Assembly (NCBI GenBank): GCA_950097015.1
Contig: CATNEN010000038.1
Location: 8,432,001-8,496,000, forward strand
Source: Macrostomum hystrix
Lineage: Eukaryota; Animalia; Platyhelminthes
Reading direction: 5' to 3'
Length of the DNA: 64,000 nucleotides
This document shows, one piece after another, positions 25,076 to 63,053 of the stretch (position 1 is its first letter; every line of letters starts with the position of its first letter). The notes beneath the pieces are model-generated. The model searched no databases. It was not told the DNA's origin and saw only the letters and a list, made by a program, of their open reading frames with translations. A program made the position numbers and the translations under genes.

Positions 25076-26164
25076 TTAATTCGATTTCGGCTCTTCAGCG
25101 TCAGCAGCAGCGCGAGCACGGGCATCAACTTCAGCGGCGAGTTTGGCGCCGTCAAGCAGGGCTTCGATTCGTCGACCGATCTCCCTGAAGTTGAAAGGCA
25201 CATTGCGCTGGGTGTTATTGTACGGGTTCATCATCGGCTTGCCGTCCAGACGCTGACTCAGCTCTGAGCAACGATCCACGTAGCGCTGGTAGTTTTTGAC
25301 GAAGTGCGATGAGGCACGCTGTCGCATCCGGGGCGGCAGAGGCGACCGGGCTGGGTCGAGCTGATCGCATACGGCCACCCGCAGGGTCTGATAGGCCAGA
25401 AAGTCGCTGTACAGTTGCTTGAATTCTGGCACAATGCTCTCATCAAAGCCAGGCTCATTGTCCCAGGGCATCTCGTTGAGGCGGAACTGCAGCGAGTGGA
25501 GCACATTGGCCAGGGTGTAATCCGGCTGCCAAGAAATCCCCTGCCAGGTGCCCAAAAGGCTTAGGCAGACGCAGCCGTTCTCATAGAAGTTCGGGTTGAA
25601 TCGAACGGTGCCTCGGCCTGTTGTGAGCAGTGCTACTCGCGGAGGGCTGCACAATTTTAAGACAAACAAGCTTATATTAGCTCTCAGTTGTGAAGTAAAT
25701 TAATAAATTGAATCATTCAATATATAAATAACTCTAAATTGCTGTGCATGGCATATAAATTACTACCCATTTTAATGAATTTCAGTTTTTTGGACATACC
25801 TGTTGGGAAATTCTGGCGGCACGCGAACAGTGAAATGAAAAAAGCCACCCTCATAGGGTGTATTATGCTGGCCGCATATCAGAAAGTCCAGCCGTGAGCA
25901 GTCCTCATCATTAGCAAATATATAAGCACCAGGTTGCTCATCGGAGATAAGACTGCGAGTATCTGACAGAACCCGAGCTAAACAGCCTGGCCTGTAGCTG
26001 TTTGCTTGAAACTCCAGGCAATCTGGGTGCCAGATGGCTGGTAGATTGACAATGGCAGCTGGCATCATGGCTAGCAAAAATTGTTGAAATTGCTCCTGAC
26101 TCGTAGGAATCAGAATGTCATTTTCTTCACTAATAGGGACATCTTCATTAATGCCTTCTGCCAT
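25076..26164 (-). CDS. UBE2Z: Ubiquitin-conjugating enzyme E2 Z-like (2 exons, about 311 aa)
   Basis: Exons 25800-26164 and 25076-25646, phase-2 GT-AG intron. Motifs TPYEGGFFHF, PPRV..LTTGRGTVRFNPNFYENGCVCLSLLGTW (catalytic Cys) and NEPGFD are characteristic of UBE2Z/USE1. Confidence 0.88.
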
Positions 26165-28839: not shown

Positions 28840-29968
28840 ATGGCAACTGCCGGAGATCCCTTCAACGAGTTCGTGTCTAAGCTGGCTGGCTCCATTGTGG
28901 TGCACCCGCTGACCTTCTCACGCATCCTCATCCAGCTAGGCTGGGAGCCGGAACCGCCCAGGCTGGGCCTCAATCTCTTCAGACGCCAGAAGTTTTTCTA
29001 TCCCAATATGTTCAAACACGTTGGCTGCGTTCGCGACGAGGTCGGCGGCATGATTCCGCTTTGGAGCACCGGCCTGCTAGCCAAGCTGGCCAGTCAGGTA
29101 GTCAGGGAGCTAGCCCTACGCGGCGTTGAGAAGGCCTGCGGCGGCGTCGGCGCCGGCAACGAGAAGAACTGGGAGCTGAAGGCTGTCAGCGTCAAGCAGC
29201 TGGCGGAGCGCTGCTGCTACTCCAGCGTTGGCCGGTCCGTGGCAGTGTTCGTTTCCTACCCACTGCACGCTGTCATGGTCCGCCAGATGGCCGCCGCCGT
29301 TTGTCACGACGCTGTCTACCGGGGCAACATTCTGTCCGTGATTCGCGAGATCTTCAAAGAGGAAGGCATTCAGGGCTTCTTCCGCGGCGTCACAGTTGCC
29401 ATCATTGGCGACCTGCTGGCCCTCTGGGGTATTTCCTTCATTGCCTACGCCTTCAACGAGCTGGTCTTTTCGGACCGAGCGCCACCCGATGTCAAGCAGG
29501 TGAGTGGCTCCGTACCCACCCTGCCTACACCACCCTACTCTACAGGCTTGTCCTGAAAGTCCTTAATTCATTGAAGGCCAGGGCCCCGTGCTATAGAACT
29601 TATAGCTAGGACCAGGGAGCTAGGAGCCTCCTAGCTAAATAATGTGTCCGTGCCGACAGATCCCTTATTTTAAATCGCATTACCATAATTATGTTCAATC
29701 AGATTAGTACGAATCCGCTTCCCAATTCGTCCAGGTGAGCCCGATGCTAGCATCATTCCTGGTGTCGTCCTTTACCTATCGCTACGGCGTGGTGTCCACC
29801 AACCTGTGCATCCGGGGCAGCTCCGGCCTGACCCTTTCTGTGCCCTACTCGAGCAGCGCCGAGTGCTGGCAGGCTCTGAAGTTGGCGGGTGGCCTGTCCC
29901 GCGGCGACAGCATGTTCTTCCGCATCGCTCCGCCCGGAGCAGCCGCCGTCAACGCCAGACGGCGTTGA
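28840..29968 (+). CDS. MTCH2: Mitochondrial carrier homolog (MTCH1/2-like), 2 exons, about 297 aa
   Basis: Exons 28840-29499 and 29735-29968. Motifs HPLTFSRILIQLGWEP, YPLHAVMVRQMA, IFKEEGIQGFFRG and LSRGDSMFFR are typical of MTCH. Confidence 0.88.
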
Positions 29969-40007: not shown

Positions 40008-43000
40008 TCAGAACAGGCGCTTCTCGTAGGAGTGCAAGCTGTGCACGCCGCCCTCCACTTGCGAGCTGGCCGTGCGCCGCTCGAACTTTAGCTGGCCGCT
40101 GTACATCCTGGATCGCATCTCAGCTAGAGACTTGGCCCCAATGTCCTGGCAGGCGTGCTGTAGCCCGGCAATTAGGTATGGCACCAGCCGAAGAACTGAG
40201 CCTTTGTCCACAATGTTCCCGGAGACACCCTGCGCTACGCGCACTCGATCAGGCTCGTAGTAGTATCTGCCGCAAATGACAGAAGCGTGACTGCCATAGC
40301 TCTTCTCCTTCCTTAACTTTCCCATTGTTCATTTTTTCTGAGAATTCCAAATAGATCTTCCCTCATCCGCCTCTTCAACCCATCATTATCACCTTCAGTC
40401 CTACTCCTCCTCTTCCACTTCGTTTCTAGTCCCCTCATATTCACCTTTAGTCCCCATTCCACCTTTTTTCTCTTCGTTCATACTCCTTTTATTCCAATTC
40501 CCATGTTTCTCCCTTTCATTCCTAATCCCTATCTTTCCCTTTATCCCCTTTCCCCTCCTTTTCTCTTCTCTTCAATCCTGCTCCCCCTGATCTTCCCCTT
40601 CAATCCTGCTCCCCCTGATCTTCCCCTTCAATCCTACTCCCCCTGACCTTCCCCCTTCAATCCTACCCCCCTGATCTTCCCCTTCAATCCTGTTCCCCTG
40701 ATCTTCCCCTTCAATCCTGCTCCCCCTGATCTTCCCCTTCAATCCTACTCCCCCTGATCTTCCCCTTCAATCCTACTCCCCCTGATCTTCCCCTTCAATC
40801 CTACTCCCCGTCCCTCCTCTCACCTCTGCTGCCCAGCGGAGGTCATCAGGACGCTAGAGGCGCCGGCGCCGCCAACTGCGCCAGCACTGAGACCGCCGGA
40901 ACCTCCGCCAGCGCCGCCACCGCCCCTGGTCTCCATAGCGTCCAGGCTGCCCATGCCGCGGTACTTTTTCAGTCGAACTCCGTCGGCGAAGAAGTACTCG
41001 CCGGGAGCCTCGCTGCTGCCAGCAAGCATGGAGCCCATCATGACGGTGGAGGCGCCAAGCGCGAGGGCTTTGGTCACGTGACCCACAGACTGGATGCCGC
41101 CATCGGCGATGACGGGCACGCTGAATCGCCTGGCGTATTCAGCCACCTGCATTGAGCAGCGAATGAGAACAAACAGTTAAATATGGATAAGACCCACTAG
41201 ATGATCAGATGGTTAATGACATACCTGATGTTCAGAGAGCTAATGACCTACCTGAAGTTCAGAGAGCTAATTACTAATAAAATCTGTTACAAAATCACCT
41301 TATAGACAGCCGTTGCCTGCGGTCGGCCGACTGCCATGACCTCCTGGGTGATGCAGATGCTGCCGGAGCCCATGCCGACACGAAGGGCGTCAACTCCTGC
41401 GTCGATGAGATTCTTGGCCTGGGCGGCCGTCACCACGTTGCCGCCGACAACCTGCAGGCCGGGGTGTGCGGACTTCAGGCGGTGGATCATGTCTATCTGG
41501 TAGATGCTGTTGCCCTGGGAGCTGTCCTGTGGACATGGAAAGTTCGAGGGATAAACATATATACTTGTATTAGTACAGATCATAAACGTATACTAGAGAG
41601 TCTAAGATTGCAAAGTTTAATTTGCGAAGGCTCTGAATTTATTTTGAACCTTGACGTCACATTAGACAATGACGTCATCTTAGACGATAAGACAATCTTG
41701 GGCTGACGTCATTTAAGAGAATGACGTCATCGAGGGAGGTAATTTAAAATCAACAGGGCCCCTTAAAACTTATAGACTTTATAGCTTAATAGACAGCAGA
41801 ACTAGAAAGTGTGTTAGTTATGGCTTGCAATTTTGATTAATTAAGAATGAAATAAGCGTCAGGATACGAGAAAGATAGCATAGAAATTTTATTACTACAG
41901 AAGTTAAAGAAAGACACACAAGCTAGTTTTATGCACAGAATAGTGTCAAGTGTTCAAACAAAAAAATGCAAACTAAATTTTTGAAGGTGTATTATTTTGC
42001 CACAAATTAATTAAAGCTGTATAATTATTTATCGATTTTGACTAATGGCTAATGATTAATTTACCTATACGATCAAGTGGGCCATTAACATGTCTAGTTT
42101 TTAGGAGGGTTATAAATTAACACCTCTAATCGTCAGGCGGGTTTCTAACACCTATGATCATCGAGAAGGCTATTAAACCCTAATTACGAGGTAAGCGACT
42201 TAAACCCTCTGATTATCAGGTAGGCCATTAAACCCTCTGATCTTTAAATATGTTAATTAATTTATCAGGTAAATAGGTTAACATTTCAATTTCTGAATAA
42301 AATAATATTGCCTTATACCCGGAGTTGTTAATGTTATATTAAAAAATTTTAATCGCAGATTAAGATTAAGACCCAGATTAAGACGAATCGAAGATTTCAT
42401 ACTGGAAGCAAATAACCCGAATCGGTAGGTTTATACGCAGACACCCAATGTGATTGGCACATATTGAGTATCAGTCACAGATTGACTATTCTAATCTTAC
42501 CAAAACGATCAGGTCGGGCCCAACAGCCATGAGACTGCTGAGCCTGGCCAAGTCGTCATTGTGCGTGCCAATGGCCGCCCCAACAAGCAGCTGATTCCTG
42601 CGGCGGTGAAATTGCCAAATGCCGAACACGCTACTTAAATAAATAGATTCAGATAAGGCTCAGATAAGATTCTACTTACTACCTACTGATAAGCTAGTCA
42701 GTAGTCATGTGAGAATGTTAATCTACATTTTAAGCATTGGTTAACATTAATAACTTACTAAACAGCTATTAGCTCCAATTGAGCAAGCAAACAAGCAAAC
42801 ACAATTTCACATGCCAATGTAACCAAAAACAAACGCAACAGTTGTAAAATGAACACCCCAATGGGACAGGCGAGTCAGGAGGGTGGTGGCAAAGTGGTTA
42901 AAGAGTTCATGAGCTTGAATCTGCGGTGAATAGGTCATCTATTTAGGGCGCAGCCGCGGAGGAGACAAGGCTCGACTGTTTGCGCAAATCATGCCGATCC

Positions 43001-45982
43001 CCCAAATAGGCACACCCCTGGGCACAATGGGTCCTCACCAGGTAATGTACCTGGTGAAGCTCAGTCACAGCAATCAGAACTTTTATTATTATGAAGGGAG
43101 GAGACTTTAATGTGGCAGCTAACCAGAACGATAACATCAGGCTGAGCATCGGCAGTGGTGAGCAGACGGAGTCTATCAAACGCGCTGCCGTGGGTGCTGA
43201 CCGCCGCTCCAACTAATAGGCGACTCCTGGCGCAGTTTTTATTATTTTGATTGGCATTGATTCATATGTAGTTTTGCTATTGATTGCAATAGTAAGCCGA
43301 TCTGATTTACTTCTAACAATACCTTGATAAGCTAAGAGAAAATAATTCGACAACATAGAGCTGCTGGCAATTTATTCGCTGGACTATCACATACAGTTTT
43401 ACAAAAAACTAGATACAGCGCACTTTTTCTACAAAATAAAAACGGATTTAAGAACACATATAACGCATGTTTTACTGCTAATTTATTCAGCCATAACTAT
43501 AACAACAATCACATATTTTCGTGAACACACACAAGAGATTTGTAATTAAAAATAGTACTTTTTGAGCAAATAGCCTACTTATAGTACTCGTAACACCACG
43601 CAGCCAGTTCCACTTCATAAAATATTCTAGTGTTGATTACACTTTCTTTCACTCACTTGTCATCCTTGCTAGACAGCGGATATTCTCGATTTTTCTTTAA
43701 ATCTGTGCGCGCAATCAGAGCCACCAGGTTGTCGTCAGCGTCAACAATTGGCAGCTTGCCTGCGCCAAAGCAATAAGTAGAATTCGGATTACAAAAACAG
43801 CAATATTTAACTAAAAACTACTAAATGACATGTACTGTTTGCACCTTTCTTGCTCTTCTGTAGTACATCGTGCGCCTGGCTCAGGGTCACCCCGGCCTGT
43901 GCCGTGATCAGGTCGGCTCGCGGTGTCATGACCTCGGCTACGGAACGTCCGTGCTCCGACTCTGGCAAAAAGTCGAAGTCGCGAAATGTCACCAGGCCGA
44001 CGAGGCGACCCCCGATGCGGCCGGTGTCTGTGATGGGAATACCGGAGAAACCGTGCTTGGATTTAGCCCCGACAACGTCGGCCACCGTGCTGTCCGGCCT
44101 GAGGACAAACGGGTCCACGATGAAGCCCTGCTTGTAGCGCTTCACCTGCAGGCCAATAGACTAGAAGGTATAGCACTGCTTCGTGACTGGGTGGAACTGC
44201 AACCTCGAAATATCTGATTGGGTGGAGCTGCGACCTCACGGGGTCTGATTGGGTGGAGCTGCGACCTCACGGGGTTTGATTGGTGGAGCTGCAACCTTAA
44301 CATCTGATTGGGTGGAGCTGCGACCTCACGGGGTCTGATTGGGTGGAGCTGCGACCTCACGGGGTTTGATTGGTGGAGCTGCAACCTTAACATCTGATTG
44401 GGTGGAGCTGCGACCTCACGGGGTCTGATTGGGTGGAGCTGCGACCTCACGGGGTTTGATTGGTGGAGCTGCAACCTTAACATCTGATTGGGTGTAGCTG
44501 CAACCTCACGGGGTTTGATTGGGTGGCGCTGCAACCTCAACATCTGATTGGGTGGAGCTGCAACCTTACGGGGCTTGATTGGGTGGCGCTGCAACCTCAA
44601 CATCTGATTGGGTGTAGCTGCGACCTCAGGAGCTAATTAGCCATTCAATCTTATTGTAAATGCTGACTGACCTTGCGAATCTCATTAGCCTGGTACTCTG
44701 GCGTACAGTTGTGGTGCACAACGCCAATGCCCCCAGATAGAGCCAGTGCAATTGCCATGTTGCTCTCAGTCACGGTGTCCATTGGAGAAGACACAAATGG
44801 CGTCTTCATGCTAAGCAACTTGGTCAATGGGGATGTCAAGTCCACAATACCAGCAGGAAAGTCAATGAAGCCAGGCAGGATGATGAGGTCGCTATGATGA
44901 ATTAGGGAACAATTTAACAGAAAATGTATTTTTTCTTGATTTCTATCATGTGATGCCTTATAAGGAATATTTATCACTGTATTGAGATAGAGTTATAATA
45001 TAATAGCCATTACCTTTTGATCTAGTGCTAATAGAATTGAGATTAATGTAAATTAAGTAGGTTAATTTTGGGCAGACAACTTATATATTTTAAAAAGCTT
45101 TTTAAACTAAAAGCTTACAAAAGCAATAGCTGCTTGTTCTGATTTAACTAGCTATCACATAAGAGGCAACCTCTAATGTCCATTTAAGATGATTAGGTTT
45201 CAATGTTTAGCAAATTTAATCAAGCTAAAGTCTAGACTAACTAACTGGTAGGCCTAGCTATTTATTCATCTGTTCAAGGCCATTCAATTTCATAATAAAA
45301 TGTAATGAATGCATTATTTGATATGTATGCATCTGTAACTAGACACATACACTTGCTATTAGCATGTAATCATGAATGTATATACAAGGAAAACACTGAC
45401 TTCAGAAGTATAGGCCTACTAGGTCTTGGCCTAGCGAATGCTAAAAACACATAAGCTGTTGCATTTTTTAACTGAAATTCTGTAGCCATTGTAGCTAGTT
45501 AGGTAATTATTTAACATTTTGAAATAAAAAGTGAAAATATAATTTTTTAGTTTTCAAGCAATATGCTATACATACTTATTTTAGTCTGTATGTGTTGAGA
45601 CAGAATATTAGAGAATAGGCCTATGTAGGGGCGGATGGGGGGTTGAGGGGCTAAAGCCCCAGATTTTTTCCTCCTGATTGGAGCCTCCATTAATGTACCA
45701 TCTCAAGGCGCCAACTCATAGCAGCGCGCAAGTCCCCTTAGCTGTTTTTGGTTTTGGCGTCCTTACCCAATTATATGGCTCTTTAATCCGAAAGAAAAAG
45801 ATCCACCACTGAGAATATGTAACGACATTATTGTTTCTTCAAAGTTGTAAGAATTTAACTTACTTGTAAGTCAATCCATCGCCGTTGTTAAACAACTCTC
45901 TGCCTGAAATTCCATCATCCGGAACATAGCCAACTGATGATATTAGTCTTTCTGCTTTATTTGGCTCGAATGCTGATGACAT
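40008..45982 (-). CDS. IMPDH: Inosine-5'-monophosphate dehydrogenase (8 exons, about 549 aa)
   Basis: Exons (minus): 45864-45982, 44672-44891, 43845-44145, 43657-43759, 42501-42597, 41299-41526, 40824-41146, 40008-40266, all phase-consistent. Motifs: [19 protein letters not shown] pair, DSSQGNS, catalytic [19 protein letters not shown]-terminal HSYEKRLF. Confidence 0.97.
40570..40810. repeat. About 28-bp CT-rich minisatellite in IMPDH intron 7
   Basis: Unit cttcaatcctactccccctgatcttccc. Confidence 0.88.
42876..43230 (+). mobile_element. Diverged SINE related to family A, in IMPDH intron 4
   Basis: GGTGGCAAAGTGGTTAA head, and catctatttagggcgcagccgcggaggagacaaggct matches family A catttatttggggcgcagccgcggagagaaggct. 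The 3' boundary is approximate. Confidence 0.55.
44213..44630. repeat. About 30-bp minisatellite with trimeric higher-order unit, IMPDH intron 2
   Basis: Unit ctgattgggtggagctgcgacctcacgggg and variants. Confidence 0.88.
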
Positions 45983-48463: not shown

Positions 48464-49054
48464 ATGTCAAGTGTACTTGGACTGCTCTGTCTCTGTTCTG
48501 TGCTTAGCTGGTGTACCAGCCCATGCCTGGCTGAAATTTGCCAGCCAGGCGAATATTTTAATGCACTCAGCAGGCTTTGTGACAATTGTCCTTCCGCATG
48601 CCTAACACCATCAGATAGCAGCAGTGCTGGCTGCAAGGAAATCTGGTCTAAGGGCTTCTGCAATCCAGTCCCTGCTGGGATCAGCATTAACACTACAAGT
48701 GTGCCTTTAGTGACTTCAACCAACTCACTAAACTATAGTCCAGACCCAGATACAGGAAAAGCCGAAGGGATAGACAATTTTTTTGTTTTTCTCATCATAG
48801 TAGTTGTTTTTTCAGTGATTGCTATCACACTTGCTTGTATTTGCCTGTTTGTAAAGCGATTCAAAGCTAGTTCAAAGCCCGATAAGCAAATTGACGGTGC
48901 TGAACACGACAATGAAGACACCAGAGACCCACTCGCATCAGCAGGGCCGGCGGGCGAGGAGACAACTTTCAAATCGTTCGGACCTATTGTCTCTAGTGGT
49001 GTGCAACCTACAACTGTTCCTAAATTACCTGATTGTGATAATCATGAAGTCTGA
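48464..49054 (+). CDS. Single-CRD TNF-receptor-like type I membrane protein, paralog 1 (196 aa)
   Basis: Signal peptide; CQPGEYFNALSRLCDNCPSAC-x10-C-x8-C; Ser/Thr stalk; TM FFVFLIIVVVFSVIAITLACICLFV followed by KRFK; no death domain. Confidence 0.8.
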   Translation: MSSVLGLLCLCSVLSWCTSPCLAEICQPGEYFNALSRLCDNCPSACLTPSDSSSAGCKEIWSKGFCNPVPAGISINTTSVPLVTSTNSLNYSPDPDTGKAEGIDNFFVFLIIVVVFSVIAITLACICLFVKRFKASSKPDKQIDGAEHDNEDTRDPLASAGPAGEETTFKSFGPIVSSGVQPTTVPKLPDCDNHEV

Positions 49055-49911
49055 AGCACCGAGGAAGTCTGAATTCAGCTTACACGTTAAAAAGTAAATT
49101 TTCAATAATTGCAATAATATTGAAGTGTGACATTTGTATATAAAAATATATAAATGAACCAATGGTTTTTTATTTGTAAAAAGTTAATTTTCAATAATTG
49201 CAATAATATTGAAGTGTGACATTTGTATATAAAAATATATAAATGAACCAATGGTTTTTTATTTGTAAAAAGTTGCAGTGCCCGATTTTTAATTCATTCA
49301 GTTAACTTAAACCAATTTCACTTAATAAGATATAGAATTCTTCTTCCTCCAACTCCTCCATTCTCCAATCACTCCTGACCTGATCTTATCACTACCTATC
49401 TGTCACTCTAATCAGTGCTACTGTCTAGTGGTCTGTCACTTATCACTCCTGGGACCAATTTTACGAAGCACTTACCACTGGTACATATTAGCTAACAAGT
49501 AGTATTGATCTATCTCAATTTTACAAAGCACAGTTATTTTACCACTCATCAACCATCAATGAGTACAGACAATTTTGTGTAGCATAGTTGCTAAATCCAA
49601 AACTCAACAATAGTAAACTTGCTTAAGTATTTCTCTCAGGAACAGAAGTTTCTGATATTTAGATAGCATGGCTAAAGCGCGAATTATACTTTATTTATAA
49701 GCTGGCCTACAGGGAGAACTTTTTTATCTAGCTTACTCTCAACACCCACAGAAATGCAAAGGAAAGATAAAATTTAGCGTCTATGGGCAAGCTTCCATAT
49801 ATGTGTTTGATAAAGTTCTTTCCATTCATAAAATTTTACGAAGTGGCTGTTTAGTTACAATCGACTTGACTGTTTTTATCAGGTACCGTAGAATCGAAGA
49901 AATCAAGACAG

Positions 49912-50522
49912 ATTCACTCCAATTCACCCCAATCACTCCGGATCTTCACCCCAATCACTCCGGATCTTCACCCCAATCACTCCGGATCTTCACTCTAATC
50001 ACTCCTGATCTTCACTCTAATCACTCCTGATCTTCACTCTAATCACTCCTGATCTTCACTCTAATCACTCCTGATCTTCACTCTAATCACTCCGGAACTT
50101 CACTCTAATCACTCCTGATCTTCACTCTAATCACTCCTGATCTTCACCCCAATCACTCCGGATCTTCACTCTAAATCACTCCTGATCTTCACTCTAATCA
50201 CTCCGGATCTTCACTCTAATCACTCCTGATCTTCACTCTAATCACTCCTGATCTTCACTCTAATCACTCCGGATCTTCACTCTAATCACTCCTGATCTTC
50301 ACTCTAATCACTCCGGATTTTCACTCTAATAACTCTTGATCTTCACTCCAATCACTCTTAATCTTCACTCCAATCACTCTTGATCTTCACTCCAATCACT
50401 CTTAATCTTCACTCCAATCACTCTTAATCTTCACTCCAATCACTCTTGATCTTCACTCCAATCACTCTTAATCTTCACTCCAATCACTCTTGATCTTCAC
50501 TCCAATCACTCCTGCTCTTCAC
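49912..50522. repeat. 22-bp minisatellite directly upstream of receptor paralog 2
   Basis: Unit tcactcctgatcttcactctaa. Confidence 0.92.
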
Positions 50523-50557
50523 TTTGATGTAAATTAACGCACAAACCAATTTCAGTC

Positions 50558-51298
50558 ATGCACTGGCTGCCAGTCGCAGCTGTTTTGCTTGTCACAGCAG
50601 CGGTATCTGCGGCGGCGCGGCTTAGCTGTAAGCCGGATGAATACCTGAATTCATTGTCCCGAGTTTGCGACCTGTGTCCACCGGACTGCTTAAAAGCTGG
50701 ACCTGTTGATCCGTTTAAGTGCAATGAGGTGCGATCTTTAGGCTACTGCCATGTCTTAGTTACCACTCCTACGTTTGTCTCAACGGTTTCTATCACTGAC
50801 GGCAGCACTCGAGCAGGAGGCGCCGTTTCAGTTAGTTCAAATCTGGTTGAACAGATTATCGTTTTCAGTTTGATGTTTGGCCTTGTATGCGCTTGCATTG
50901 TGGCTATTGTTGTTTTCCGTCTGCGAGACCGCAGATTAGCAGCTAATCGACGGCAGGCGGTTAATACTGAGTTTGCTGCAAACAAAGACTCCATTCCGCT
51001 CATGGAGCCGGAGCGTCGGCCTCCTCGCGATCATACAGCTGATGCCGACATTTCAAACGATTCTCCAGACCATGCGCCTGGTGTACCTGATCTTCAATCG
51101 CCAGACGATAAATGCCCCGATGCTGGTCCGTCAGTTGTCGGCACGCCTGTGGTCGATGACGCCACTACTGACAAGCCAGGGCCGTCTGGTTTGCAGTCTC
51201 CGGATACGGTGGAAACGGAGCAACGTTCCGATGTTTTCTCGCGAATGAAAGTTGGTCTAGGCGGACCTCCCGATGCAAAACAAACTGCGGATGCATAA
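50558..51298 (+). CDS. Single-CRD TNF-receptor-like type I membrane protein, paralog 2 (246 aa)
   Basis: Signal peptide; CKPDEYLNSLSRVCDLCPPDC-x10-C-x8-C; TM IIVFSLMFGLVCACIVAIVVF followed by RLRDRR; acidic, Pro-rich tail. Confidence 0.8.
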   Translation: MHWLPVAAVLLVTAAVSAAARLSCKPDEYLNSLSRVCDLCPPDCLKAGPVDPFKCNEVRSLGYCHVLVTTPTFVSTVSITDGSTRAGGAVSVSSNLVEQIIVFSLMFGLVCACIVAIVVFRLRDRRLAANRRQAVNTEFAANKDSIPLMEPERRPPRDHTADADISNDSPDHAPGVPDLQSPDDKCPDAGPSVVGTPVVDDATTDKPGPSGLQSPDTVETEQRSDVFSRMKVGLGGPPDAKQTADA

Positions 51299-52271
51299 AT
51301 GCTTGTTTAGCCAAAAAAGAAGTCATCTCAATAAGTGCACGTGTAGATTTGACGGCACCAGACCACGCCAATCAACAGCTATTCTTTTCGTTTTTTATAA
51401 TTGATTTAAATATTGTGCCAATTTTAAATAAGTCTTATGACTCGCTCATTGCTCACACTGATGCCGTTAGCATTACTAAAGCCAGACGGCAGTCTCACCC
51501 AGACGCTGTTGCCGCTTGACGCGTACAGGCGGCCACTGATCGATTTGGGATCCGGTGATGCCGGTGTCCACAGCGCTGTCCTCCTCCGGAGAGTCCAGGA
51601 GGTGGAGGGTCGCTCGCCCGGTGACCCTTAGGTAATGGACGAGCTGGCAGATGTTCTCAGGCCTGAAAACGTCGGAGAGATCCGGGTTTGGGCCGAGATA
51701 GGAGTAGCAACGCTGATCATCAAGGCGGTCATGGGCTTGAATGAGTGAAGGACTATTGCGGCTCGCGCGCCTTCGACAGCACCATCGATAGCCCAACTGA
51801 GGGATTCTAAACGACATCCTGAGTCCTCCAAGACACTTAAAGTATGTTATTATTATTATTATTAATTAGTGCTTAAGAGAACTGCGTTGATAGCTACTAA
51901 CTGTGAGCTGATAACTAGTAACTGTACGCTATTAAAAAATAACTGTAAGCTAATAACTAGTGAGTAGTGAGCATTGTACGAGTACTAGCTATTAACTTCA
52001 TTTCGGCTTGAACTGTATTTTTTCCGCCTACTTCGTGCTCTGATTCATTTTGTCACTCTGTTTAAAGCTTGTTATTACTACTATGTTTTACTACAATCGA
52101 TAAGTTCAACCCCTTACGTACAATTTGTGCATATTGTAAATTTTTTTGTGATTGTTGCCATATCCTTTGTTTTCATTTTTTATAACATTTTTGATGCAAT
52201 CGTAATAAAATTTATAAAGCAGATCTTTCTTAGTTGAAAGAACTGCTTTTTAACGAAAGTAAAAAGTTGTC

Positions 52272-53593
52272 CCGGTGCTTATGTCTTGCACCGCGAAGCT
52301 TTTCAACCGACTGCTTCTCGATCGCCTGCAGTCGGTGCTGGACCCGTACCTCCGTTACGAGCAGAACGGGTTCCGGCCACAGCGCGGTACAGTAACCCAG
52401 ATCCTCGCACTCCGCCGTGTCATCGAGGAGGCGCGCATCCGCCAGTCAACGCTGATCGTCGTGTTTGTCGACTTCCGCAAGGCGTTTGACTCGGTGTCGA
52501 GGGCCGCGCTTCCACTAGTCCTTCGTGCCTACCGGGTCCCAGAGCAGCTAGTCGCCGCTGTCATGTCGCTGTATCGCGACACGCGCGCTGCTGTTGTTAC
52601 GGCGGACGGCCTGTCCGACCTGTTTGCCACCTCGTCAGGAGTGCTGCAGGGCGACACGCTGGCCCCGTTCCTCTTCGTGCTTCTCCTGGACTGGGTGCTT
52701 CGGACTGCGCTCCCCTCGGCTGAAGACGGCTTCCTGCTACGCAGACGCATCGGTCGCCGCCACGATGAGAAGCGCCTCAGTGTGCTTGGCTACGCCGACG
52801 ACCTCGCCCTCCTGTCCTCGACTGTCGAAGGTGCCCAGCGCCAGATTGACAGGTTGGCTGAGGTGGCATCAAGCGTCGGCCTAGTGATCAACACGCTTAA
52901 GACCGAGGTGCTGACCGTGCCGGCCGACATCCCAGCGGACCTGACGTGCCGCGGCGCAGACGGGCAGATCATCTCGCTCGCACGCTGCCAGCGCTTCACT
53001 TACCTCGGCGGTCTGGTGCCCAACGTGGAAGACGACATCCGGCGGCGCAGAGGACTCGCATGGGCGGCCTACCGTTCGATCCGGGCCGTCCTCCAGTCCA
53101 CAGCGCTGCCTGACCGCCAGAGGGCTCGGCTGTGGCAGGCGGTGATCGAGACCGTCCTGCTGTACAACGCCGAGTCGTGGACGCTGACGGCTACGCTGGA
53201 GCGGCAGCTGGACTCGGCGCACTCGGGGCTGCTCCGTGCGGCCTTTCAAGCTGACGAGAGCGTCGGGACGGAGGCTCTGTACGAGAGAGCTCAGCTGCAA
53301 CGCCCGTCCACCATCCTGCGCCAGCGACGACTTCGACTAGCGGGCCACGTCATTCGGGCCGAAAGCTACTGCCGCCAGCCCGCCCAGGACGTCCTTCTGC
53401 TCACCCTGCAGGGCCCGTTCAGGCGCGGCCAGGCTCGGACCCGCCGCTACGTCGACTGCCTGCTGAGCGACGCCAGGGCGCCCGACACTGCCTCCGGCGC
53501 GGACCATGTTCGCGCGCTGGCTCTGCGGCGCATCATTTGACGCCGCCCCCCTGACGTTTGGGGCTTGCGTATTTTGTTGTTGTTGTTGTTGTT
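52272..53593 (+). mobile_element. 5'-truncated non-LTR retrotransposon (RTE-like LINE) with (TTG)n tail and 13-bp TSD
   Basis: ORF 52275-53540 contains RT motifs QNGFRP, FVDFRKAFDSV, GVLQGDTLAPFLF, YADD, FTYLG and LLYNAESW. There is a short 3' UTR and a TTG tail. GTAAAAAGTTGTC occurs at 52259-52271 and again at 53594-53606. Confidence 0.93.
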
Positions 53594-53851
53594 GTAAAAA
53601 GTTGTCTTGTGTTTTGCTGCTCTTCCCTGTCCCATGTTATTATATTGTTTTGTAAGATTGCTTATTCAGAATATTCATGCTTTTCTTTCAACAAGAATTA
53701 AGTTAGCCAAATCGACTACACAAATTGAAAATATAACATAAGCATACAAAAAGCAAATGCTTTAACCGCCAAATTCCATTTTGTTTCAAATGTGGCCAGT
53801 TCCTTTCCAACAGTCCACTGAGTAGTTGGTTTGCCATTAAACCACGGTCTG

Positions 53852-55280
53852 CCACTCTCATTAGTCAGCCATCCCCTTCCCCACTCTCATTAGTCAGCCA
53901 TCCCCTTCCCCACTCTCATTAGTCAGTCATCCCCTTCCCCCACTCTCATTAGTCAGCCATCCCCTTCCCCACTCTCATTAGTCAGCCATCCCCTTCCCCA
54001 CTCTCATTAGTCAGCCATCCCCTTCCCCACTCTCATTAGTCAGTTATCCCCTTCCCCACTCTCATTAGTCAGCCATCCCCTTCCCCACTCTCATTAGTCA
54101 GCCGTCCACTTCCCCACTCTCATTAGTCAGCCATCCCCTTCCCCACTCTCATTAGTCAGCCATCCCCTTCCCCACTCTCATTAGTCAGCCATCCCCTTCC
54201 CCACTCTCATTAGTCAGCCGTCCACTTCCCCACTCTCATTAGTCAGCCATCCCCTTCCCCACTCTCATTAGTCAGCCATCCCCTTCCCCACTCTCATTAG
54301 TCAGCCGTCCACTTCCCCACTCTCATTAGTCAGCCATCCCCTTCCCCACTCTCATTAGTCAGCCATCCCCTTCCCCACTCTCATTAGTCAGCCATCCCCT
54401 TCCCCACTCTCATTAGTCAGCCATCCCCTTCCCCACTCTCATTAGTCAGCCATCCCCTTCCCCACTCTCATTAGTCAGCCATCCCCTTCCCCACTCTCAT
54501 TAGTCAGCCATCCCCTTCCCCACTCTCATTAGTCAGCCATCCCCTTCCCCACTCTCATTAGTCAGCCGTCCACTTCCCCACTCTCATTAGTCAGCCATCC
54601 CCTTCCCCACTCTCATTAGTCAGCCATCCCCTTCCCCACTCTCATTAGTCAGCCATCCCCTTCCCCACTCTCATTAGTCAGCCATCCCCTTCCCCACTCT
54701 CATTAGTCAGCCGTCCACTTCCCCACTCTCATTAGTCAGCCATCCCCTTCCCCACTCTCATTAGTCAGCCATCCCCTTCCCCACTCTCATTAGTCAGTTA
54801 TCCCCTTCCCCACTCTCATTAGTCAGCCATCCCCTTCCCCACTCTCATTAGTCAGTTATCCCCTTCCCCACTCTCATTAGTCAGCCATCCCCTTCCCCAC
54901 TCTCATTAGTCAGCCATCCCCTTCCCCACTCTCATTAGTCAGTTATCCCCTTCCCCACTCTCATTAGTCAGCCATCCCCTTCCCCACTCTCATTAGTCAG
55001 CCATCCCCTTCCCCACTCTCATTAGTCAGCCGTCCACTTCCCCACTCTCATTAGTCAGCCATCCCCTTCCCCACTCTCATTAGTCAGCCATCCCCTTCCC
55101 CACTCTCATTAGTCAGCCATCCCCTCCCCCACTCTCATTAGTCAGCCATCCCCTTCCCCACTCTCATTAGTCAGCCATCCCCTTCCCCGCTCTCATTAGT
55201 CAGCCATCCCCTTCCCCACTCTCATTAGTCAGCCATCCCCTCCCCCACTCTCATTAGTCAGCCATGCCCTCCCCCACTCT
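53852..55280. repeat. 29-bp minisatellite upstream of receptor paralog 3
   Basis: Unit ccactctcattagtcagccatccccttcc, about 49 copies. Confidence 0.95.
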
Positions 55281-55396
55281 GATTGGTTAGTCGCGCTATT
55301 TCTCACTCTTATTGATCAGTTAGCACCCCTTTCTGTTACTCTAATTGGTCTGCTGGCACCGTCTTCTATTTCAGCACAGCCGAAGCAGATCTCGCG

Positions 55397-56080
55397 ATGT
55401 CTCGACATCTGCTTATTATTCCTGCCACGCTGTGCCTTGTAGGTTTGCTGAGCTGCAGCTTGAGACGGGTCGCCTGTATGAGCCCTCCGGTTTCGACGAT
55501 CACAAAGCAGTACTCGCCAACCTGCCCAGCTGGCGAATATCTGAATAAGAACAGTCGAGTGTGCGACTATTGCCCGGCTGCCTGCTTGAATCCCTCCAGC
55601 AGTGCCGATTCATCGCAATGCCAGCTGATTTGGTCGGCTGGCGACTGCCTGCAGCCAACCAGTTCGCCTAGTACCGCTACGGCAGCTGACCGACCAGTCA
55701 CAGATTCGGCGGCTCAACCGACATTCGAGCCCAGGCCCAACAAGATTCGCAGTGAAATCCTTGGCGCAGTGTTGCTTTTTGTGGCTTCCGCTGTCGCCAT
55801 TGCCGGCTGGCTGATTTACAACAAGCTGTGGAAGTCGCGTTCTGCTGGCCGTCGGAGTCGTTCCTCAAATGTTGGATTATCAGAGACCAGGCAAATGGTC
55901 TTCGCTGCGCCTCCCGACAATAGACAAGACAGCGCCGACGAAGCGGCTGCTAAGTTCAACAGTGGGGCTCCGAGCAGTCCAAATGCACATGAAAGCTCGT
56001 CAGCTGGCGATGGTCAGGTTGATCATTTATTAAGGGGGAACCGAGGAGGCAGGTGTGTCGCCGAAGGTGTCAACAACTAA
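55397..56080 (+). CDS. Single-CRD TNF-receptor-like type I membrane protein, paralog 3 (227 aa)
   Basis: Signal peptide; CPAGEYLNKNSRVCDYCPAAC-x11-C-x8-C; TM ILGAVLLFVASAVAIAGWLIY followed by basic residues. Confidence 0.8.
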   Translation: MSRHLLIIPATLCLVGLLSCSLRRVACMSPPVSTITKQYSPTCPAGEYLNKNSRVCDYCPAACLNPSSSADSSQCQLIWSAGDCLQPTSSPSTATAADRPVTDSAAQPTFEPRPNKIRSEILGAVLLFVASAVAIAGWLIYNKLWKSRSAGRRSRSSNVGLSETRQMVFAAPPDNRQDSADEAAAKFNSGAPSSPNAHESSSAGDGQVDHLLRGNRGGRCVAEGVNN

Positions 56081-56349: not shown

Positions 56350-56606
56350 ATGATTGTTGCCATGTACATTGTTTTGTGATTGTTGCCATGTACATTGTTT
56401 TGTGATTGTTGCCATGTACATTGTTTTGTGATTGTTGCCATGTACATTGTTTTGTGATTGTTGCCATGTACATTGTTTTGTGATTGTTGCCATGTACATT
56501 GTTTTGTGATTGTTGCCATGTACATTGTTTTGTGATTGTTGCCATGTACATTGTTTTGTGATTGTTGCCATGTACATTGTTTTGTGATTGTTGCCATGTA
56601 CATTGT
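56350..56606. repeat. 26-bp minisatellite
   Basis: Unit tgattgttgccatgtacattgttttg. Confidence 0.92.
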
Positions 56607-57370: not shown

Positions 57371-58630
57371 ATGGCCAGCGCCATGCAGTGCATCGGATCT
57401 AGCAAACTGTGCTATTGCAGCAGCAAAATACTCACCGGACAGTTGGCTTTCAAAGTTAACTTATTAGCTTCGAATTGTTACAAACGGACTTTGAATTTAG
57501 GTAATTTCTTACACTATTTTTGGCCTTGAACACCGACGTATCGCTTCACAGCACTGTCGCAGCTTTTGCCCGGCGCATCTAAAGACTGCGTACGGCTGTT
57601 CAGTCCATGGACTGGGGGGACGACACACTCACTTGGTGAACTGAAGCATGGCGGAGTTAAGCATCTTGCTAATGGACACAAATTATTCCAGTGGAGTCAA
57701 GAAACAAACATCCGACCTTTAAGTCGTGAGCCAGCGAGGAGGAGGCAATTCTGCCCATTCACACAGGTGTGATCGTGAACATCTGCCCTGACTTTCTCAT
57801 CTTCGGGCAGTGTACAGTGCTGTACACTCACTGTGCTTTGGATGTTGGCCCTCATGGCTTACATTTTATGACAAGCCCCCAAGCCATCTCTCCGCGGCAC
57901 CGCTCCAAATGAATGTGGCCTCACTACGGAATCGAGCTCAGGGACCTTGGTGCGGTAGCCTTGCACCTACAAAAAATTTTGAGAAAAATTTAGACGGTTT
58001 TAATTCCATTCATGCATTATGAGCTCACTTTGTGCACAATGGGTATACAATAAACTGCCAGGTGCTCAAAGGAACAGGAACAACAATAACAACAACGACA
58101 ACAATAACAGCAAGGATGGCGATTTTAACAAAGCTGATAGCAGCAGCAGCAGCAGCAGCAGCGAGCACCTGGGCGCCAGTCCGGCCCTGGTTGCCGAGTC
58201 GCTGGCCTCGGCACGTCGAGTTCTGAGCGGAGCGTACTCCCGCCGGACTCTGATCGACCGCAGGAGCGGGCGCCAGTACTCGGCGCACGACTACCAGCTG
58301 GCTCCCAGCTGCTGCATCTACGGCTGCCAGAAGTGGCACAGCTTCACGGCTGTCTGCACCGGCGGTAATTGCATTGTTGAACTGCTGGCAAAGGAGTTCC
58401 AGCCACCCGGCTCTGGCCAGTCGGTGCTGCTGACTCCCGGACGGTCGGTCAATATCCCGGCTGGCCGGCCCTACTACCTGCGCGGCCAAGGCTTCGGACA
58501 GGCGCGCCTGTTGATTGTGTCCGTGCCACCACTGCTAGATGAGGAGCTGCAGGACTCCGATGGCAGCTTCCCGAGGCCGCCGATGCCGCAGTCGCCTCAG
58601 TGGCAGCAGCCACCGCCGGCTAATAACTAG
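57371..58630 (+). CDS. Cupin-fold-like protein (2 exons)
   Basis: Exon 57371-57500 (MASAMQC..., ends TTAG|GTAAT) splices in phase 1 to 58062-58630 (CCAG|GTGCTC). The C-terminal LTPGRSVNIPAGRPYYLRGQGFGQARLLIVSVPP resembles cupin motif 2. Confidence 0.6.
57570..57965 (-). mobile_element. Composite of SINE family B (57570-57730) and family A (57730-57965) fragments
   Basis: 57570-57730 aligns by eye to 60020-60225. 57730-57965 aligns to 22740-23000. Confidence 0.7.
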
Positions 58631-62006: not shown

Positions 62007-63053
62007 TCAGTGGCAGTTCCAAGGCCAGCTAAGGGCGGCCGCCATCAGCTGGCCGGCCTTCTGTCGAAGCCTCTGCCTCGCGACAATCTGGATGTAGAAT
62101 CCCACCGAGCAGTCCACGGACAGCAGGAACACGCCCAGGTAGTAGAGAACCAGCTGGGCTAGCAGCGACTCGTGCTGGCGGCGGAGCTCCCAGACGAAGC
62201 GGCCCAACTGGCAGACGGCGAACGCCGCCGTCACGGGAATCAGTACCCGCAGGCCGCCCAGGGTGGACGCGGCTCCTGAGGGTGCTCTCCGGAAGTGAAA
62301 CACCCGAGTGGATCCCGGTGGCCGGAAGCTTTCCAGCCGACGAGTCACAGTGACGGCCAGCATGGCGTTGGCAGTCAGGCAGACGACTATCGGCAGCGCA
62401 ACGAGCAGGACGCTCTGCAGCAGAGTGTTTAGGCGAAAATCGAAGTCGGTGAAGTCGAAATAGAGTCGCAGCCGGCAGGCTGTGCGGCTGCCCGCTGACT
62501 GGACCATCAGCTCGGCCTTGGAGATCAGAGCGATTCTGGTCGCGGCTGCCACGGGTAAGAGCAGCAGCAGGGCGCAGGCAGCCCATGGCAGCAGACGGCA
62601 GCCGACGCTGAGCTTCTCTGAGCACTGCGCCAGGCACCAAAGACGGTTCAGCACCGCGCAGCTGGTCAGGCAGAGGCGAGTCGAATCGAGGGCCATCTGC
62701 ACCATCGACAGCGGCGTGTGGACGTGCGCGATGTAAACCATCCAGGAGCTCGGCAAGCCAGTGGCGTAAGCAGCCAGGTGCATCCAGCAGTCGTTGGTGT
62801 GCAGCGCCAGGGTGACGGCGTCAACCCAGGCCAAGGTGCGCATGATGCGCCAGAACAGCAGCTTTTCGCTGCGCAGCAGGCTGACCAGAAGCATATTCCC
62901 GGCTGCGCCAACCAAGAATAGCGCGAGCTGGAGCAGGCACAGACTCGCCATCAGGTAGTCGACGGTCGATGCCGACATGGCCTCGGAGAAGCCGCCGCCG
63001 TCGCCGCCGCCGGTGCAGTTTCCGAGGGCCACGTGGATCCACACTAGGGGCAT
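62007..63053 (-). CDS. Divergent intronless class A (rhodopsin-like) orphan GPCR
   Basis: 348 aa with about seven hydrophobic segments. TM1 GN, TM2 LAWVD, TM3 end NRL (DRY-like), TM5 LP, TM6 FAVCQLG, TM7 DCSVGFYIQ. Confidence 0.75.
   Translation of the reverse strand: MPLVWIHVALGNCTGGGDGGGFSEAMSASTVDYLMASLCLLQLALFLVGAAGNMLLVSLLRSEKLLFWRIMRTLAWVDAVTLALHTNDCWMHLAAYATGLPSSWMVYIAHVHTPLSMVQMALDSTRLCLTSCAVLNRLWCLAQCSEKLSVGCRLLPWAACALLLLLPVAAATRIALISKAELMVQSAGSRTACRLRLYFDFTDFDFRLNTLLQSVLLVALPIVVCLTANAMLAVTVTRRLESFRPPGSTRVFHFRRAPSGAASTLGGLRVLIPVTAAFAVCQLGRFVWELRRQHESLLAQLVLYYLGVFLLSVDCSVGFYIQIVARQRLRQKAGQLMAAALSWPWNCH

What the first reader, a model, noticed from the sequence alone, without database searches (positions are those of the whole stretch)
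48464..56080. Tandem cluster of three BCMA/TACI/Fn14-like single-CRD TNF receptors in an invertebrate
Seen: three co-oriented intronless ORFs (48464, 50558, 55397). Each has a signal peptide, one 6-Cys module C-x3-EY[FL]N-x2-SR[LV]CD-x-CP-x2-C-x10/11-C-x8-C, a Ser/Thr stalk, one TM and an unrelated disordered tail. Known: the BCMA CRD reads [21 protein letters not shown]..C..C, with the same C-x3-EY-x8-C-x2-C-x3-C spacing, and its DxL motif binds BAFF/APRIL. Fn14 and Drosophila Grindelwald are type-I single-CRD receptors without a death domain. Inference: this is a lineage-specific, probably unannotated family of small TNFR-like receptors. The ectodomain is conserved while the signalling tails have diverged, making it a candidate TNF/JNK module for immunity, wound response or regeneration.
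Basis: partly seen in the sequence, partly recalled or inferred. Interest (0 to 1): 0.85.

Follow-up and report, generated by a model that had tools for sequence, protein, structure and literature searches.

The report
Flatworm BCMA-like mini TNF receptors
Three neighbouring single-exon genes in a Macrostomum-type flatworm encode small membrane receptors whose only folded outer part most resembles the one-module TNF receptors BCMA, TACI and Grindelwald; they belong to a family of at least nine that could supply receptors for this worm's several TNF-like ligands.

Summary
Three co-oriented uninterrupted ORFs (196, 246 and 227 aa) each encode a signal peptide, one 6-Cys module, a Ser/Thr-rich stalk, one TM helix and a divergent tail.

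**Family size.** The genome holds at least nine members: three here, three more about 19.5 Mb away on the same contig, and three singletons. Five orthogroups are shared with Macrostomum lignano at about 30% identity.

**Evidence for a BCMA/TACI-type TNF-receptor module (three independent lines):**
- A 13-sequence profile puts human BCMA first among 177,635 PDB sequences (E = 0.0028), with all six Cys aligned.
- An AlphaFold model scanned against 48,161 PDB representatives gives only two chains with Z ≥ 2: BCMA and Grindelwald.
- Language-model neighbours are TACI, BCMA, Grindelwald, Fn14 and BAFF-R clusters.

**Caveats.**
- Every score is weak in absolute terms.
- Pfam's BCMA, TACI, Fn14 and TNFR_c6 models all miss the family.
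- The hairpin half matches ephrin-receptor-like repeats equally well.
- Expression, ligand binding and signalling were not tested.

**Prior knowledge.** Two M. lignano orthologs are already auto-named "TNFR-Cys domain-containing", and a preprint tallies many TNFR-like genes in that species. This scan also found similar genes on other DNA of the same genome (s1-319815, s1-300538, s1-846834). I class this as a new member of a known kind.

The parts
48464..49054 (+). Gene W1: 196-aa type I membrane protein (leader 1-23, Cys module 26-66, stalk, TM 108-130, 66-aa tail carrying VPKLP near the C-terminus)
   Evidence: ORF; domain layout; reciprocal best hit to M. lignano P0014/P0022
48539..48661 (+). 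W1 Cys module (residues 26-66), BCMA/TACI-type spacing
   Evidence: AF2 model mef25c50f8819 at pLDDT 73 with a hairpin plus helices; atlas neighbours TACI-CRD2 0.91 and BCMA 0.88
48785..48853 (+). W1 transmembrane segment (residues 108-130)
   Evidence: hydropathy 3.2 over 19 residues, followed by KRFK
50558..51298 (+). Gene W2: 246-aa type I membrane protein (leader 1-20, Cys module 24-64, TM 100-120, 126-aa acidic, Pro-rich tail)
   Evidence: ortholog of M. lignano P0008 (BLASTP E = 1.6e-28; tree support 82/65)
50627..50749 (+). W2 Cys module (residues 24-64)
50855..50917 (+). W2 transmembrane segment (residues 100-120)
55397..56080 (+). Gene W3: 227-aa type I membrane protein (leader, Cys module 43-84, TM 121-141, 86-aa tail)
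   Evidence: closest relative is W1
55523..55648 (+). W3 Cys module (residues 43-84)
55757..55819 (+). W3 transmembrane segment (residues 121-141)
52275..53540 (+). Reverse-transcriptase ORF without an ATG start, taken as a retroelement fragment inserted between W2 and W3. It lies inside the cluster but is not part of the family
   Evidence: RVT_1 E = 4.2e-27
53852..55284 (.). Tandem array of a 29-bp unit, 49 copies, between the retroelement and W3. Together with the RT ORF it accounts for the wider W2-W3 spacing

Best explanation
W1, W2 and W3 are three members of a family of at least nine small type I membrane receptors in macrostomid flatworms. Their only folded extracellular part is a single TNF-receptor-superfamily cysteine-rich domain of the BCMA/TACI type. 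It consists of a beta-hairpin (C1-C2) that carries an invariant Tyr and usually Asn-x-Leu where BCMA has Asp-x-Leu, followed by a helix-loop-helix held by C3-C6.

Shown here: the gene and domain layout, family size, conservation with M. lignano, and the sequence, predicted-structure and language-model resemblance to BCMA, TACI and Grindelwald.

Inferred, not shown:
- The hairpin tip docks in the groove between two subunits of one of the worm's trimeric TNF-like ligands.
- Ligand trimers cluster three receptors.
- The short, disordered tails have no death domain and recruit adaptors such as the expanded TRAF set to drive JNK-type signalling, with the divergent tails giving different outputs.
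For: Sequence:
- The 13-sequence profile ranks BCMA first among 177,635 PDB sequences. E improves from 0.18 with 8 modules to 0.0028.
- All six Cys align to BCMA C8, C21, C24, C28, C37 and C41, and the eYfnsl consensus sits on BCMA's EYFDSL.
- With the module-only profile, every PDB hit up to E = 10 is ELAPOR1, BCMA or EDAR.

Structure:
- Two AF2 models (pLDDT 73) show a hairpin plus helix-loop-helix.
- Foldseek ranks 1-10 for the second model are all BCMA.
- An unfiltered scan of 48,161 PDB representatives gives only two chains with Z >= 2: BCMA (Z 2.7, 35/35 residues, 2.7 A) and Grindelwald (Z 2.3, 39/48 residues).

Language model:
- The nearest clusters are TACI-CRD2, BCMA, a molluscan TNFR-Cys cluster, Grindelwald, Fn14, BAFF-R and Wengen.
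- UniProt auto-names two M. lignano orthologs 'TNFR-Cys domain-containing protein'.

Real genes:
- Nine paralogs keep the same architecture.
- Five orthogroups are shared with M. lignano.
- Six Cys, one Tyr and one Pro are invariant in 15 sequences.
- The module is more conserved than the stalk or tail.
- The W2 and W1 orthologs carry consecutive accessions on one 117-kb M. lignano contig.

Pathway context:
- A TNF-domain exon passes the Pfam cut-off and there are at least 18 TRAF MATH matches in the genome.
- TNF ligands are published for M. lignano (PMC7519573).
- The hairpin tip is the main ligand contact in BCMA, TACI, Fn14 and Grnd (PMC8024323).
Against: - No single score is strong: best E = 0.0028, best Z = 2.7, Foldseek E >= 0.37.
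- Pfam TNFR_c6 reaches only E = 0.26, in one of eight members.
- The BCMA-Tall_bind, TACI-CRD2 and stn_TNFRSF12A models run over the whole genome do not land on any family locus.
- The hairpin half aligns to an ephrin-receptor-like repeat at 79% hhalign probability, but to this genome's canonical TNFR at only 3%.
- C5-C6 spacing is 6-8 residues against 3 in BCMA, and the DxL Asp is usually Asn.
- TRAF-type motifs in the tails are sparse and no better than chance.
- Expression, ligand binding and signalling are all untested.
Confidence: 0.6

Rival explanations
1. The module is a solitary ephrin-receptor-like (GCC2/GCC3, ELAPOR-type) cysteine hairpin with a lineage-specific helical cap. The proteins would then be surface molecules that bind something other than TNF ligands, for example adhesion, self/non-self or gamete recognition partners. 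This would fit their fast evolution.
For: - hhalign gives 78.7% probability for module residues 3-24 against an Ephrin_rec_like repeat protein.
- ELAPOR1 is the top PDB hit of the module-only profile, at E = 0.1.
- Several significant hits of the exhaustive profile search are Ephrin_rec_like/TNFR_ELAPOR1 repeat proteins.
- Orthologs are only about 30% identical.
Against: - Those matches cover only the first 22 residues and leave C4-C6 unmatched.
- Ephrin-receptor-like repeats occur in tandem arrays in large proteins, whereas these proteins have a single module.
- All whole-domain matches by sequence, structure and language model are single-CRD TNF receptors.
- From my own knowledge, both families belong to one Cys-repeat superfamily, so this rival concerns the ligand rather than the fold.
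Confidence: 0.2
2. They do bind TNF-like ligands but act mainly as non-signalling decoys or modulators, by ligand sinks, shedding of the ectodomain or competition with the death-domain NGFR-like TNFR. The variable tails would then carry no conserved signalling function.
For: - The tails have no domain and diverge almost completely between paralogs.
- Some tails are only 28-31 residues long, in L007 and P0009.
- No convincing TRAF motif was found.
Against: - Short islands in the tails are conserved between orthologs: SIPL[LM]..PE, KVTS.P..P and a terminal S[RK]Q.LV.
- A [ST][VA]PK[IL]P motif recurs in three orthogroups.
- From my own knowledge, BCMA, Fn14 and Grnd signal through similarly short tails without a death domain.
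Confidence: 0.12
3. The ORFs are not functional genes. They would be chance ORFs, pseudogenes or cargo carried by a transposable element.
For: - A reverse-transcriptase fragment and satellite arrays lie within the cluster.
- None of the proteins is present verbatim in a collection of about 15 billion proteins.
- Expression could not be checked.
Against: - Nine intact ORFs of 177-276 aa share an identical architecture.
- Orthologs exist in M. lignano with the structural residues invariant and the module most conserved.
- The motif count is 3 against 0.0 expected.
- A conserved neighbouring pair exists in M. lignano.
- The RT ORF is separate from the three genes and lies between them.
Confidence: 0.03

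Closest known systems
BCMA (TNFRSF17) and TACI CRD2 (TNFRSF13B), vertebrate BAFF/APRIL receptors
   Same: - Type I protein with a single functional CRD, a short stalk, one TM and a short tail without a death domain.
- Six Cys with identical spacing through the first four plus the Tyr (C-x4-Y-x7-C-x2-C-x3-C).
- A hairpin followed by a helix-loop-helix.
- BCMA is the best PDB sequence hit (E = 0.0028) and the best structural hit (Z 2.7 over the whole domain).
- The nearest atlas clusters are TACI-CRD2 and BCMA.
   Different: - The C4-C5 loop is 8-25 residues and C5-C6 is 6-8 residues, against 8 and 3 in BCMA.
- The Asp of the DxL ligand-binding motif is usually Asn.
- The Pro after C3 is invariant here, giving C-P.
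- Pfam's BCMA and TACI models do not detect the family.
- No BAFF/APRIL ortholog was shown in the worm.
- The resemblance is in kind; orthology was not demonstrated.
Grindelwald (Drosophila TNFR for Eiger; PDB 6zsy)
   Same: - An invertebrate single-CRD type I TNFR without a death domain.
- A hairpin plus two helices, with the hairpin tip binding between two TNF subunits (PMC8024323).
- The second and only other structural hit in the unfiltered PDB scan (Z 2.3, 39/48 residues).
- The atlas 'protein grindelwald' cluster scores 0.92.
   Different: - Grnd has eight Cys in X2+C2 modules (PMC8024323), against six here.
- Sequence identity in the structural alignment is 15%.
- No sequence-level match was found.
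Fn14 (TNFRSF12A) and BAFF-R (TNFRSF13C)
   Same: Both are minimal single-CRD TNFRs with short TRAF-binding tails. They appear in the Foldseek lists (2eqp, 2hfg, 1osx and 8zuj) and among the atlas neighbours.
   Different: - Matches are partial, covering only the 17-33-residue hairpin.
- BAFF-R has four Cys.
- The Fn14 Pfam model gives nothing at the family loci.
Ephrin-receptor-like / ELAPOR1 TNFR-like repeats (PF07699, PF23091)
   Same: The hairpin consensus C-P-x-G-x-Y-x7-C-x2-C-P is shared.
   Different: - These are tandem repeats in large proteins.
- They have no equivalent of C4-C6 or the helical half.
- The matches cover only 22 residues.
Published flatworm TNFRs: the NGFR-like SmTNFR family (PMC7519573) and the 'Wgn/Grnd homolog' tallies for M. 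lignano (bioRxiv 10.1101/2024.07.27.603686)
   Same: They come from the same phylum and the same presumed pathway. The preprint counts 16 Wgn-like and 1 Grnd-like proteins in M. lignano, and some of these may be orthologs of this family.
   Different: - The NGFR-like receptor has four CRDs and a death domain, and PMC7519573 reports one such receptor per species.
- This family has one CRD and no death domain.
- It is not described as a family in either paper, and the accessions could not be cross-checked.

Membership tests
TNF receptor superfamily (fold level) | Cysteine-rich domain built of TNFR-type modules (a hairpin A1-type module plus a second disulfide-stapled module) | tested here: met
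   - Profile to BCMA at E = 0.0028 with six of six Cys aligned.
- BCMA and Grindelwald are the only chains with Z >= 2 among 48,161.
- Atlas neighbours are all small TNFRs.
- Scores are weak in absolute terms.
TNF receptor superfamily (fold level) | Match to Pfam TNFR_c6 (PF00020) above the gathering score | tested here: not met
   The best result is E = 0.26, in one of eight members. The preprint 10.1101/2024.07.27.603686 states that this model also misses Grindelwald.
TNF receptor superfamily (function) | Binds a trimeric TNF-homology-domain ligand | not testable with these tools
   The ligand domains in this genome are split over exons. A co-fold would need a joined model, which was left out.
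BCMA/TACI subfamily (A1-D2 single CRD) | Cys spacing C-x4-Y-x7-C-x2-C-x3-C-x8-C-x3-C with pairing 1-2, 3-5, 4-6 | tested here: inconclusive
   The first four Cys and the Tyr match exactly, while the last two loops are longer. Disulfide pairing could not be read because no model coordinates are available.
BCMA/TACI subfamily (A1-D2 single CRD) | DxL motif at the hairpin tip | tested here: not met
   The aligned positions read N-x-L in most members and D-x-F in L007 and P0009. W3 has N-x-N and L006 has N-x-G. The Leu or another hydrophobic residue is usually kept, but the Asp is usually not.
BCMA/TACI subfamily (A1-D2 single CRD) | Detected by Pfam BCMA-Tall_bind (PF09257) or TACI-CRD2 (PF09305) | tested here: not met
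   There is no hit in hmmscan at E <= 10. Whole-genome scans with both models miss all family loci.
Grindelwald family | Eight Cys in an X2 hairpin plus a C2 helix-loop-helix (PMC8024323) | tested here: not met
   Only six Cys are conserved. The overall shape is similar (Z 2.3).
Fn14 (stn_TNFRSF12A) | Pfam PF12191 match | tested here: not met
   The whole-genome scan gives only noise, away from the family loci.
Ephrin_rec_like / GCC2_GCC3 repeats | Tandem repeats of about 48 residues, each with a CxxCPxG(T/S) continuation | tested here: not met
   There is one module per protein, and CP-x2-C replaces CPxGT. Only 22 residues align, and there is no Pfam hit.
Single-CRD TNFR architecture (BCMA, TACI-short, BAFF-R, Fn14, Grnd) | Leader or type I/III topology, one CRD, a short stalk, one TM and a short tail without a death domain | tested here: met
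   See, with no Pfam domain in the tails.

The most novel reading that the evidence does not exclude
The six-Cys A1-D2 module thought to be peculiar to the vertebrate BAFF/APRIL receptors is an ancient bilaterian receptor type. It would survive in macrostomid flatworms, and by the atlas hits in molluscs, as expanded, tandemly duplicating families. These families would be the missing cognate receptors for the flatworms' multiple TNF ligands, overturning the published view of one TNFR per platyhelminth.
Probability: 0.3. Interest if true: 0.65.

Novelty: new member of a known kind. Interest (0 to 1): 0.45.

Why it matters
A published survey (PMC7519573) reports a single NGFR-like TNF receptor per flatworm, yet up to ten TNF ligands in M. 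lignano. That leaves many ligands with only one known receptor. A family of at least nine BCMA/Grindelwald-like one-module receptors, conserved between two macrostomid species and still duplicating in tandem, is a concrete candidate for the missing receptors.

Macrostomum is a transgenic, RNAi-amenable regeneration model, so ligand-receptor pairing and the role of TNF signalling in wound response, immunity or stem-cell control could be tested directly. The family also bears on whether the BCMA/TACI-type module predates vertebrates.

The finding is tempered in three ways. All similarity scores are weak. Automated resources already flag some orthologs as TNFR-Cys. A preprint has already counted many TNFR-like genes in M. 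lignano.

Tried and rejected
**Searches that found nothing useful**
- Whole-protein profile of the three ORFs against PDB sequences: only TM-segment noise.
- The search for homologous proteins with W3: nothing. With the 13-sequence alignment it was swamped by low-complexity words and returned only P0009.
- First AF2 model in the unfiltered VIA scan: no Z >= 2.
- Pfam BCMA, TACI and Fn14 models run over the genome: no hit at the family loci.
- Top multi-repeat hits of the exhaustive profile search (CBM_14 peritrophin arrays, treble-clef zinc-finger repeats): rejected as summed Cys-repeat noise.
- L028 is an ELAPOR-like multi-repeat gene and not a family member.
- TRAF2 and TRAF6 consensus motifs in the tails are sparse and not conserved, so I do not claim them.
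- dN/dS was not attempted, because paralogs and orthologs are only about 30% identical and synonymous sites would be saturated.
- Exact-sequence look-up of eight members: none is in the collection.

**Steps that could not be run**
- Co-fold with a TNF ligand: not run. Every TNF-domain match in this genome is an exon-sized piece.


Full report
**1. Observation**

I call them W1, W2 and W3.

Aligned, they share a hydrophobic N-terminal leader and one six-Cys module, then a stalk with 37-44% Ser/Thr/Pro. A single hydrophobic segment of 19-23 residues follows, then a basic cluster and a tail with no recognisable domain.

The family regex occurs three times in the window's six-frame translation and 0.0 times in 200 shuffles.

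The wider gap between W2 and W3 holds a reverse-transcriptase ORF without an ATG start (RVT_1, E = 4e-27), which I take to be a retroelement fragment. It also holds a tandem array of 49 copies of a 29-bp unit.

**2. Family and taxon**

A profile of the three ORFs run over the whole 220-Mb, 42-contig assembly finds five more members. Three form a second cluster about 19.5 Mb away on the same contig (L008, L005, L004). The other two are singletons on contigs C1 (L006) and C37 (L007).

A module-only profile adds a divergent ninth member on C24 (L027). All nine are uninterrupted ORFs of 177-276 aa with the same layout.

An exhaustive HMM search of 1.84 billion representative proteins finds single-module, full-length relatives only in Macrostomum lignano. 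These are P0004, P0008, P0009, P0013/14 and P0017; the same look-up listed two further cluster members, P0021 and P0022. The window therefore comes from a macrostomid flatworm.

Orthology and conservation:
- Reciprocal best hits and a maximum-likelihood tree give five shared orthogroups at only about 30% identity. They are W1-P0014/22, W2-P0008, L004-P0004, L005-P0017 and L007-P0009.
- The W2 and W1 orthologs carry consecutive accessions on the same 117-kb M. lignano contig, so the tandem pair looks conserved.
- Across 15 sequences the only invariant residues are the six Cys, one Tyr and one Pro.
- Between orthologs the module is the best-conserved part: 43-58% identity, against 27-39% for the stalk and about 30% for the tail.

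This is the pattern of real, fast-evolving genes whose fold is under constraint. None of eight members tested is present verbatim in a collection of about 15 billion proteins, so for this species they are unannotated.

**3. What the module is**

Pfam gives nothing above threshold. The best result is TNFR_c6 at E = 0.26 in one of eight members. Three independent lines nevertheless converge on the smallest TNF receptors.

*(a) Sequence.*
- The 8-module profile against 177,635 distinct PDB sequences returns only ELAPOR1 (E = 0.1), ten BCMA constructs (E = 0.18-1.2) and EDAR (E = 0.34).
- Deepening the profile to 13 sequences brings BCMA to first place at E = 0.0028, with two further BCMA constructs at 0.023 and 0.056.
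- All six profile Cys align with BCMA C8, C21, C24, C28, C37 and C41. The eYfnsl consensus lies on BCMA's EYFDSL hairpin, and gaps fall only in the last two loops.

*(b) Predicted structure.*
- Two AlphaFold models (W1 module and L005 module, pLDDT 73) show a beta-hairpin followed by a helix-loop-helix.
- Foldseek E-values are all 0.37 or higher, but ranks 1-10 for the L005 model are all BCMA.
- In the unfiltered VIA-align scan of 48,161 PDB representatives, only two chains reach Z >= 2. They are BCMA (Z 2.7, 35 of 35 residues, 2.7 A) and Grindelwald (Z 2.3, 39 of 48 residues, 3.3 A).
- These Z values are low because the domain has about 40 residues. The specificity of the result is what carries weight.

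*(c) Language-model features.*
- For the W1 module the nearest named clusters are TACI-CRD2 (0.91) and two BCMA clusters (0.88, 0.87).
- For full-length L005 they are a molluscan TNFR-Cys cluster (0.94), Grindelwald (0.92) and a molluscan cluster with TACI/BCMA Pfam hits (0.92). TACI, Fn14, BAFF-R, BCMA and Wengen follow.

UniProt's automatic rules already name two of the M. lignano orthologs "TNFR-Cys domain-containing protein".

**4. Counter-evidence**

- The curated vertebrate models BCMA-Tall_bind, TACI-CRD2 and stn_TNFRSF12A, run over the whole genome, do not land on any family locus.
- The first 22 residues (C-P-x-G-x-Y-x7-C-x2-C-P) align to an ephrin-receptor-like repeat at 79% hhalign probability. 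They align to this genome's own canonical multi-CRD TNFR at only 3%.
- Several significant hits of the exhaustive search are Ephrin_rec_like/TNFR_ELAPOR1 repeat proteins.

The hairpin half is therefore generic to the wider TNFR/ephrin-receptor-like Cys-repeat group. Only the second half (C4-C6) and the single-module architecture point specifically to BCMA/TACI.

There are also differences from BCMA. The C5-C6 spacing is 6-8 residues rather than 3. The Asp of the DxL motif, the main ligand contact in BCMA, TACI and Fn14 according to PMC8024323, is usually Asn. L007 and P0009 have D-x-F at that position.

I therefore file the family under the TNF-receptor superfamily as working like BCMA, TACI and Grindelwald. 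I do not file it as a member of the vertebrate BCMA or TACI families.

**5. Mechanism**

*Shown:* architecture, topology signals and fold resemblance.

*Inferred:*
- The hairpin tip inserts between two subunits of a trimeric TNF-like ligand, as in BCMA-APRIL and Grnd-Eiger (PMC8024323).
- Trimeric ligands cluster the receptors.
- The short tails, which have no death domain, recruit adaptors.

*Context:*
- The genome has a TNF-domain exon over the Pfam cut-off and a canonical multi-CRD TNFR.
- It has at least 18 TRAF MATH matches.
- M. lignano has published TNF ligands (PMC7519573).
- Earlier unverified notes of this scan report TNF-ligand clusters elsewhere in this genome (s1-306111, s1-408122).

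*Tails:* There are no convincing TRAF motifs. Short islands do survive between orthologs: SIPL[LM]..PE in W2/P0008, KVTS.P..P in L004/P0004 and a terminal S[RK]Q.LV in L007/P0009. A [ST][VA]PK[IL]P motif near the C-terminus recurs in W1, L004 and P0017. These are candidates only.

**6. Not done**

- A co-fold of a module with a TNF ligand was not run. All TNF-domain matches here are exon-sized.

**7. Known or new**

Single-CRD TNF receptors are a known kind (BCMA, TACI, BAFF-R, Fn14, Grindelwald). For flatworms, PMC7519573 reports one NGFR-like TNFR per species. A preprint (10.1101/2024.07.27.603686) tallies 6 Eiger, 16 Wgn-like and 1 Grnd-like proteins in M. lignano, without describing this family.

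This scan has also noted similar genes elsewhere in the same genome:
- a six-gene "minimal TNFR-like" cluster on another contig (s1-319815), which my profile does not detect and which therefore seems to be a different family;
- single-gene notes whose lengths equal the L007 and L006 ORFs (s1-300538, s1-846834).

What is added here:
- the definition of a nine-member six-Cys family in two clusters and three singletons;
- its conservation with M. lignano;
- the demonstration that its whole-domain match is BCMA-type.

**Verdict:** a new member of a known kind, of moderate interest.

Noticed in passing
window 52275-53540 and 53852-55284: A reverse-transcriptase ORF without an ATG start (RVT_1, E = 4e-27), followed by 49 copies of a 29-bp tandem repeat, lies between W2 and W3. 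It looks like a retroelement fragment inserted into the cluster.
   Followed up: partly
window 49923-50523, 56351-56606, 49088-49274: Satellite arrays flank the genes. A 22-bp unit repeated 27 times ends 35 bp before the W2 start codon. A perfect 26-bp unit repeated 9.8 times lies 270 bp after the W3 stop. An 89-bp unit repeated 2.1 times lies in the W1 3' flank. They might promote unequal crossing-over in the cluster.
   Followed up: no
window 40008-44977, minus strand: Exons of an IMP dehydrogenase gene lie here (Pfam IMPDH E up to 4e-30, plus a CBS exon). A 31/90-bp tandem repeat at 44184-44628 lies between two of the exons and creates a spurious 153-aa repeat ORF.
   Followed up: partly
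window 62007-63053, minus strand: A 348-aa ORF with several hydrophobic segments and no Pfam match at E <= 0.001. It may be an orphan multi-pass membrane protein or GPCR-like gene.
   Followed up: no
window 58019-58630, plus strand: A 203-aa ORF co-oriented with the cluster, with Asn and Ser runs, no Pfam match and no Cys module. Its significance is unknown.
   Followed up: no
window 28828-29553 (+), 25079-25669 (-), 7968-8636 (-): Exon-sized ORFs match a mitochondrial carrier (E = 9e-14), a ubiquitin-conjugating enzyme (E = 1e-8) and a PDZ domain (E = 2e-20). These are ordinary host genes upstream of the cluster.
   Followed up: partly
L008, L005, L004 = G000:C38:27998325-28002637: A second three-gene cluster of the same family lies about 19.5 Mb away on the same contig, in mixed orientation (+, -, -). 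The L005 tail carries four copies of a 13-residue TTVPEAATAGSET repeat.
   Followed up: partly
L010 = G000:C31:2352237-2352347 (ORF L010:1132-1851, minus strand): A canonical multi-CRD TNFR_c6 gene fragment (31.3 bits, over the cut-off). It is probably the NGFR-like flatworm TNFR described in PMC7519573.
   Followed up: no
L028 = G000:C38:27917698-27917781: An ELAPOR-like/ephrin-receptor-like multi-repeat ORF lies about 80 kb from the second cluster. It shares only the hairpin consensus with the family.
   Followed up: partly
G000, at least 18 places, e.g. C39:5935961 and C39:5946216: The TRAF MATH domain complement is expanded, with some copies in tandem about 10 kb apart on C39 and several on C38 at 4.72-4.78 Mb.
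   Followed up: no
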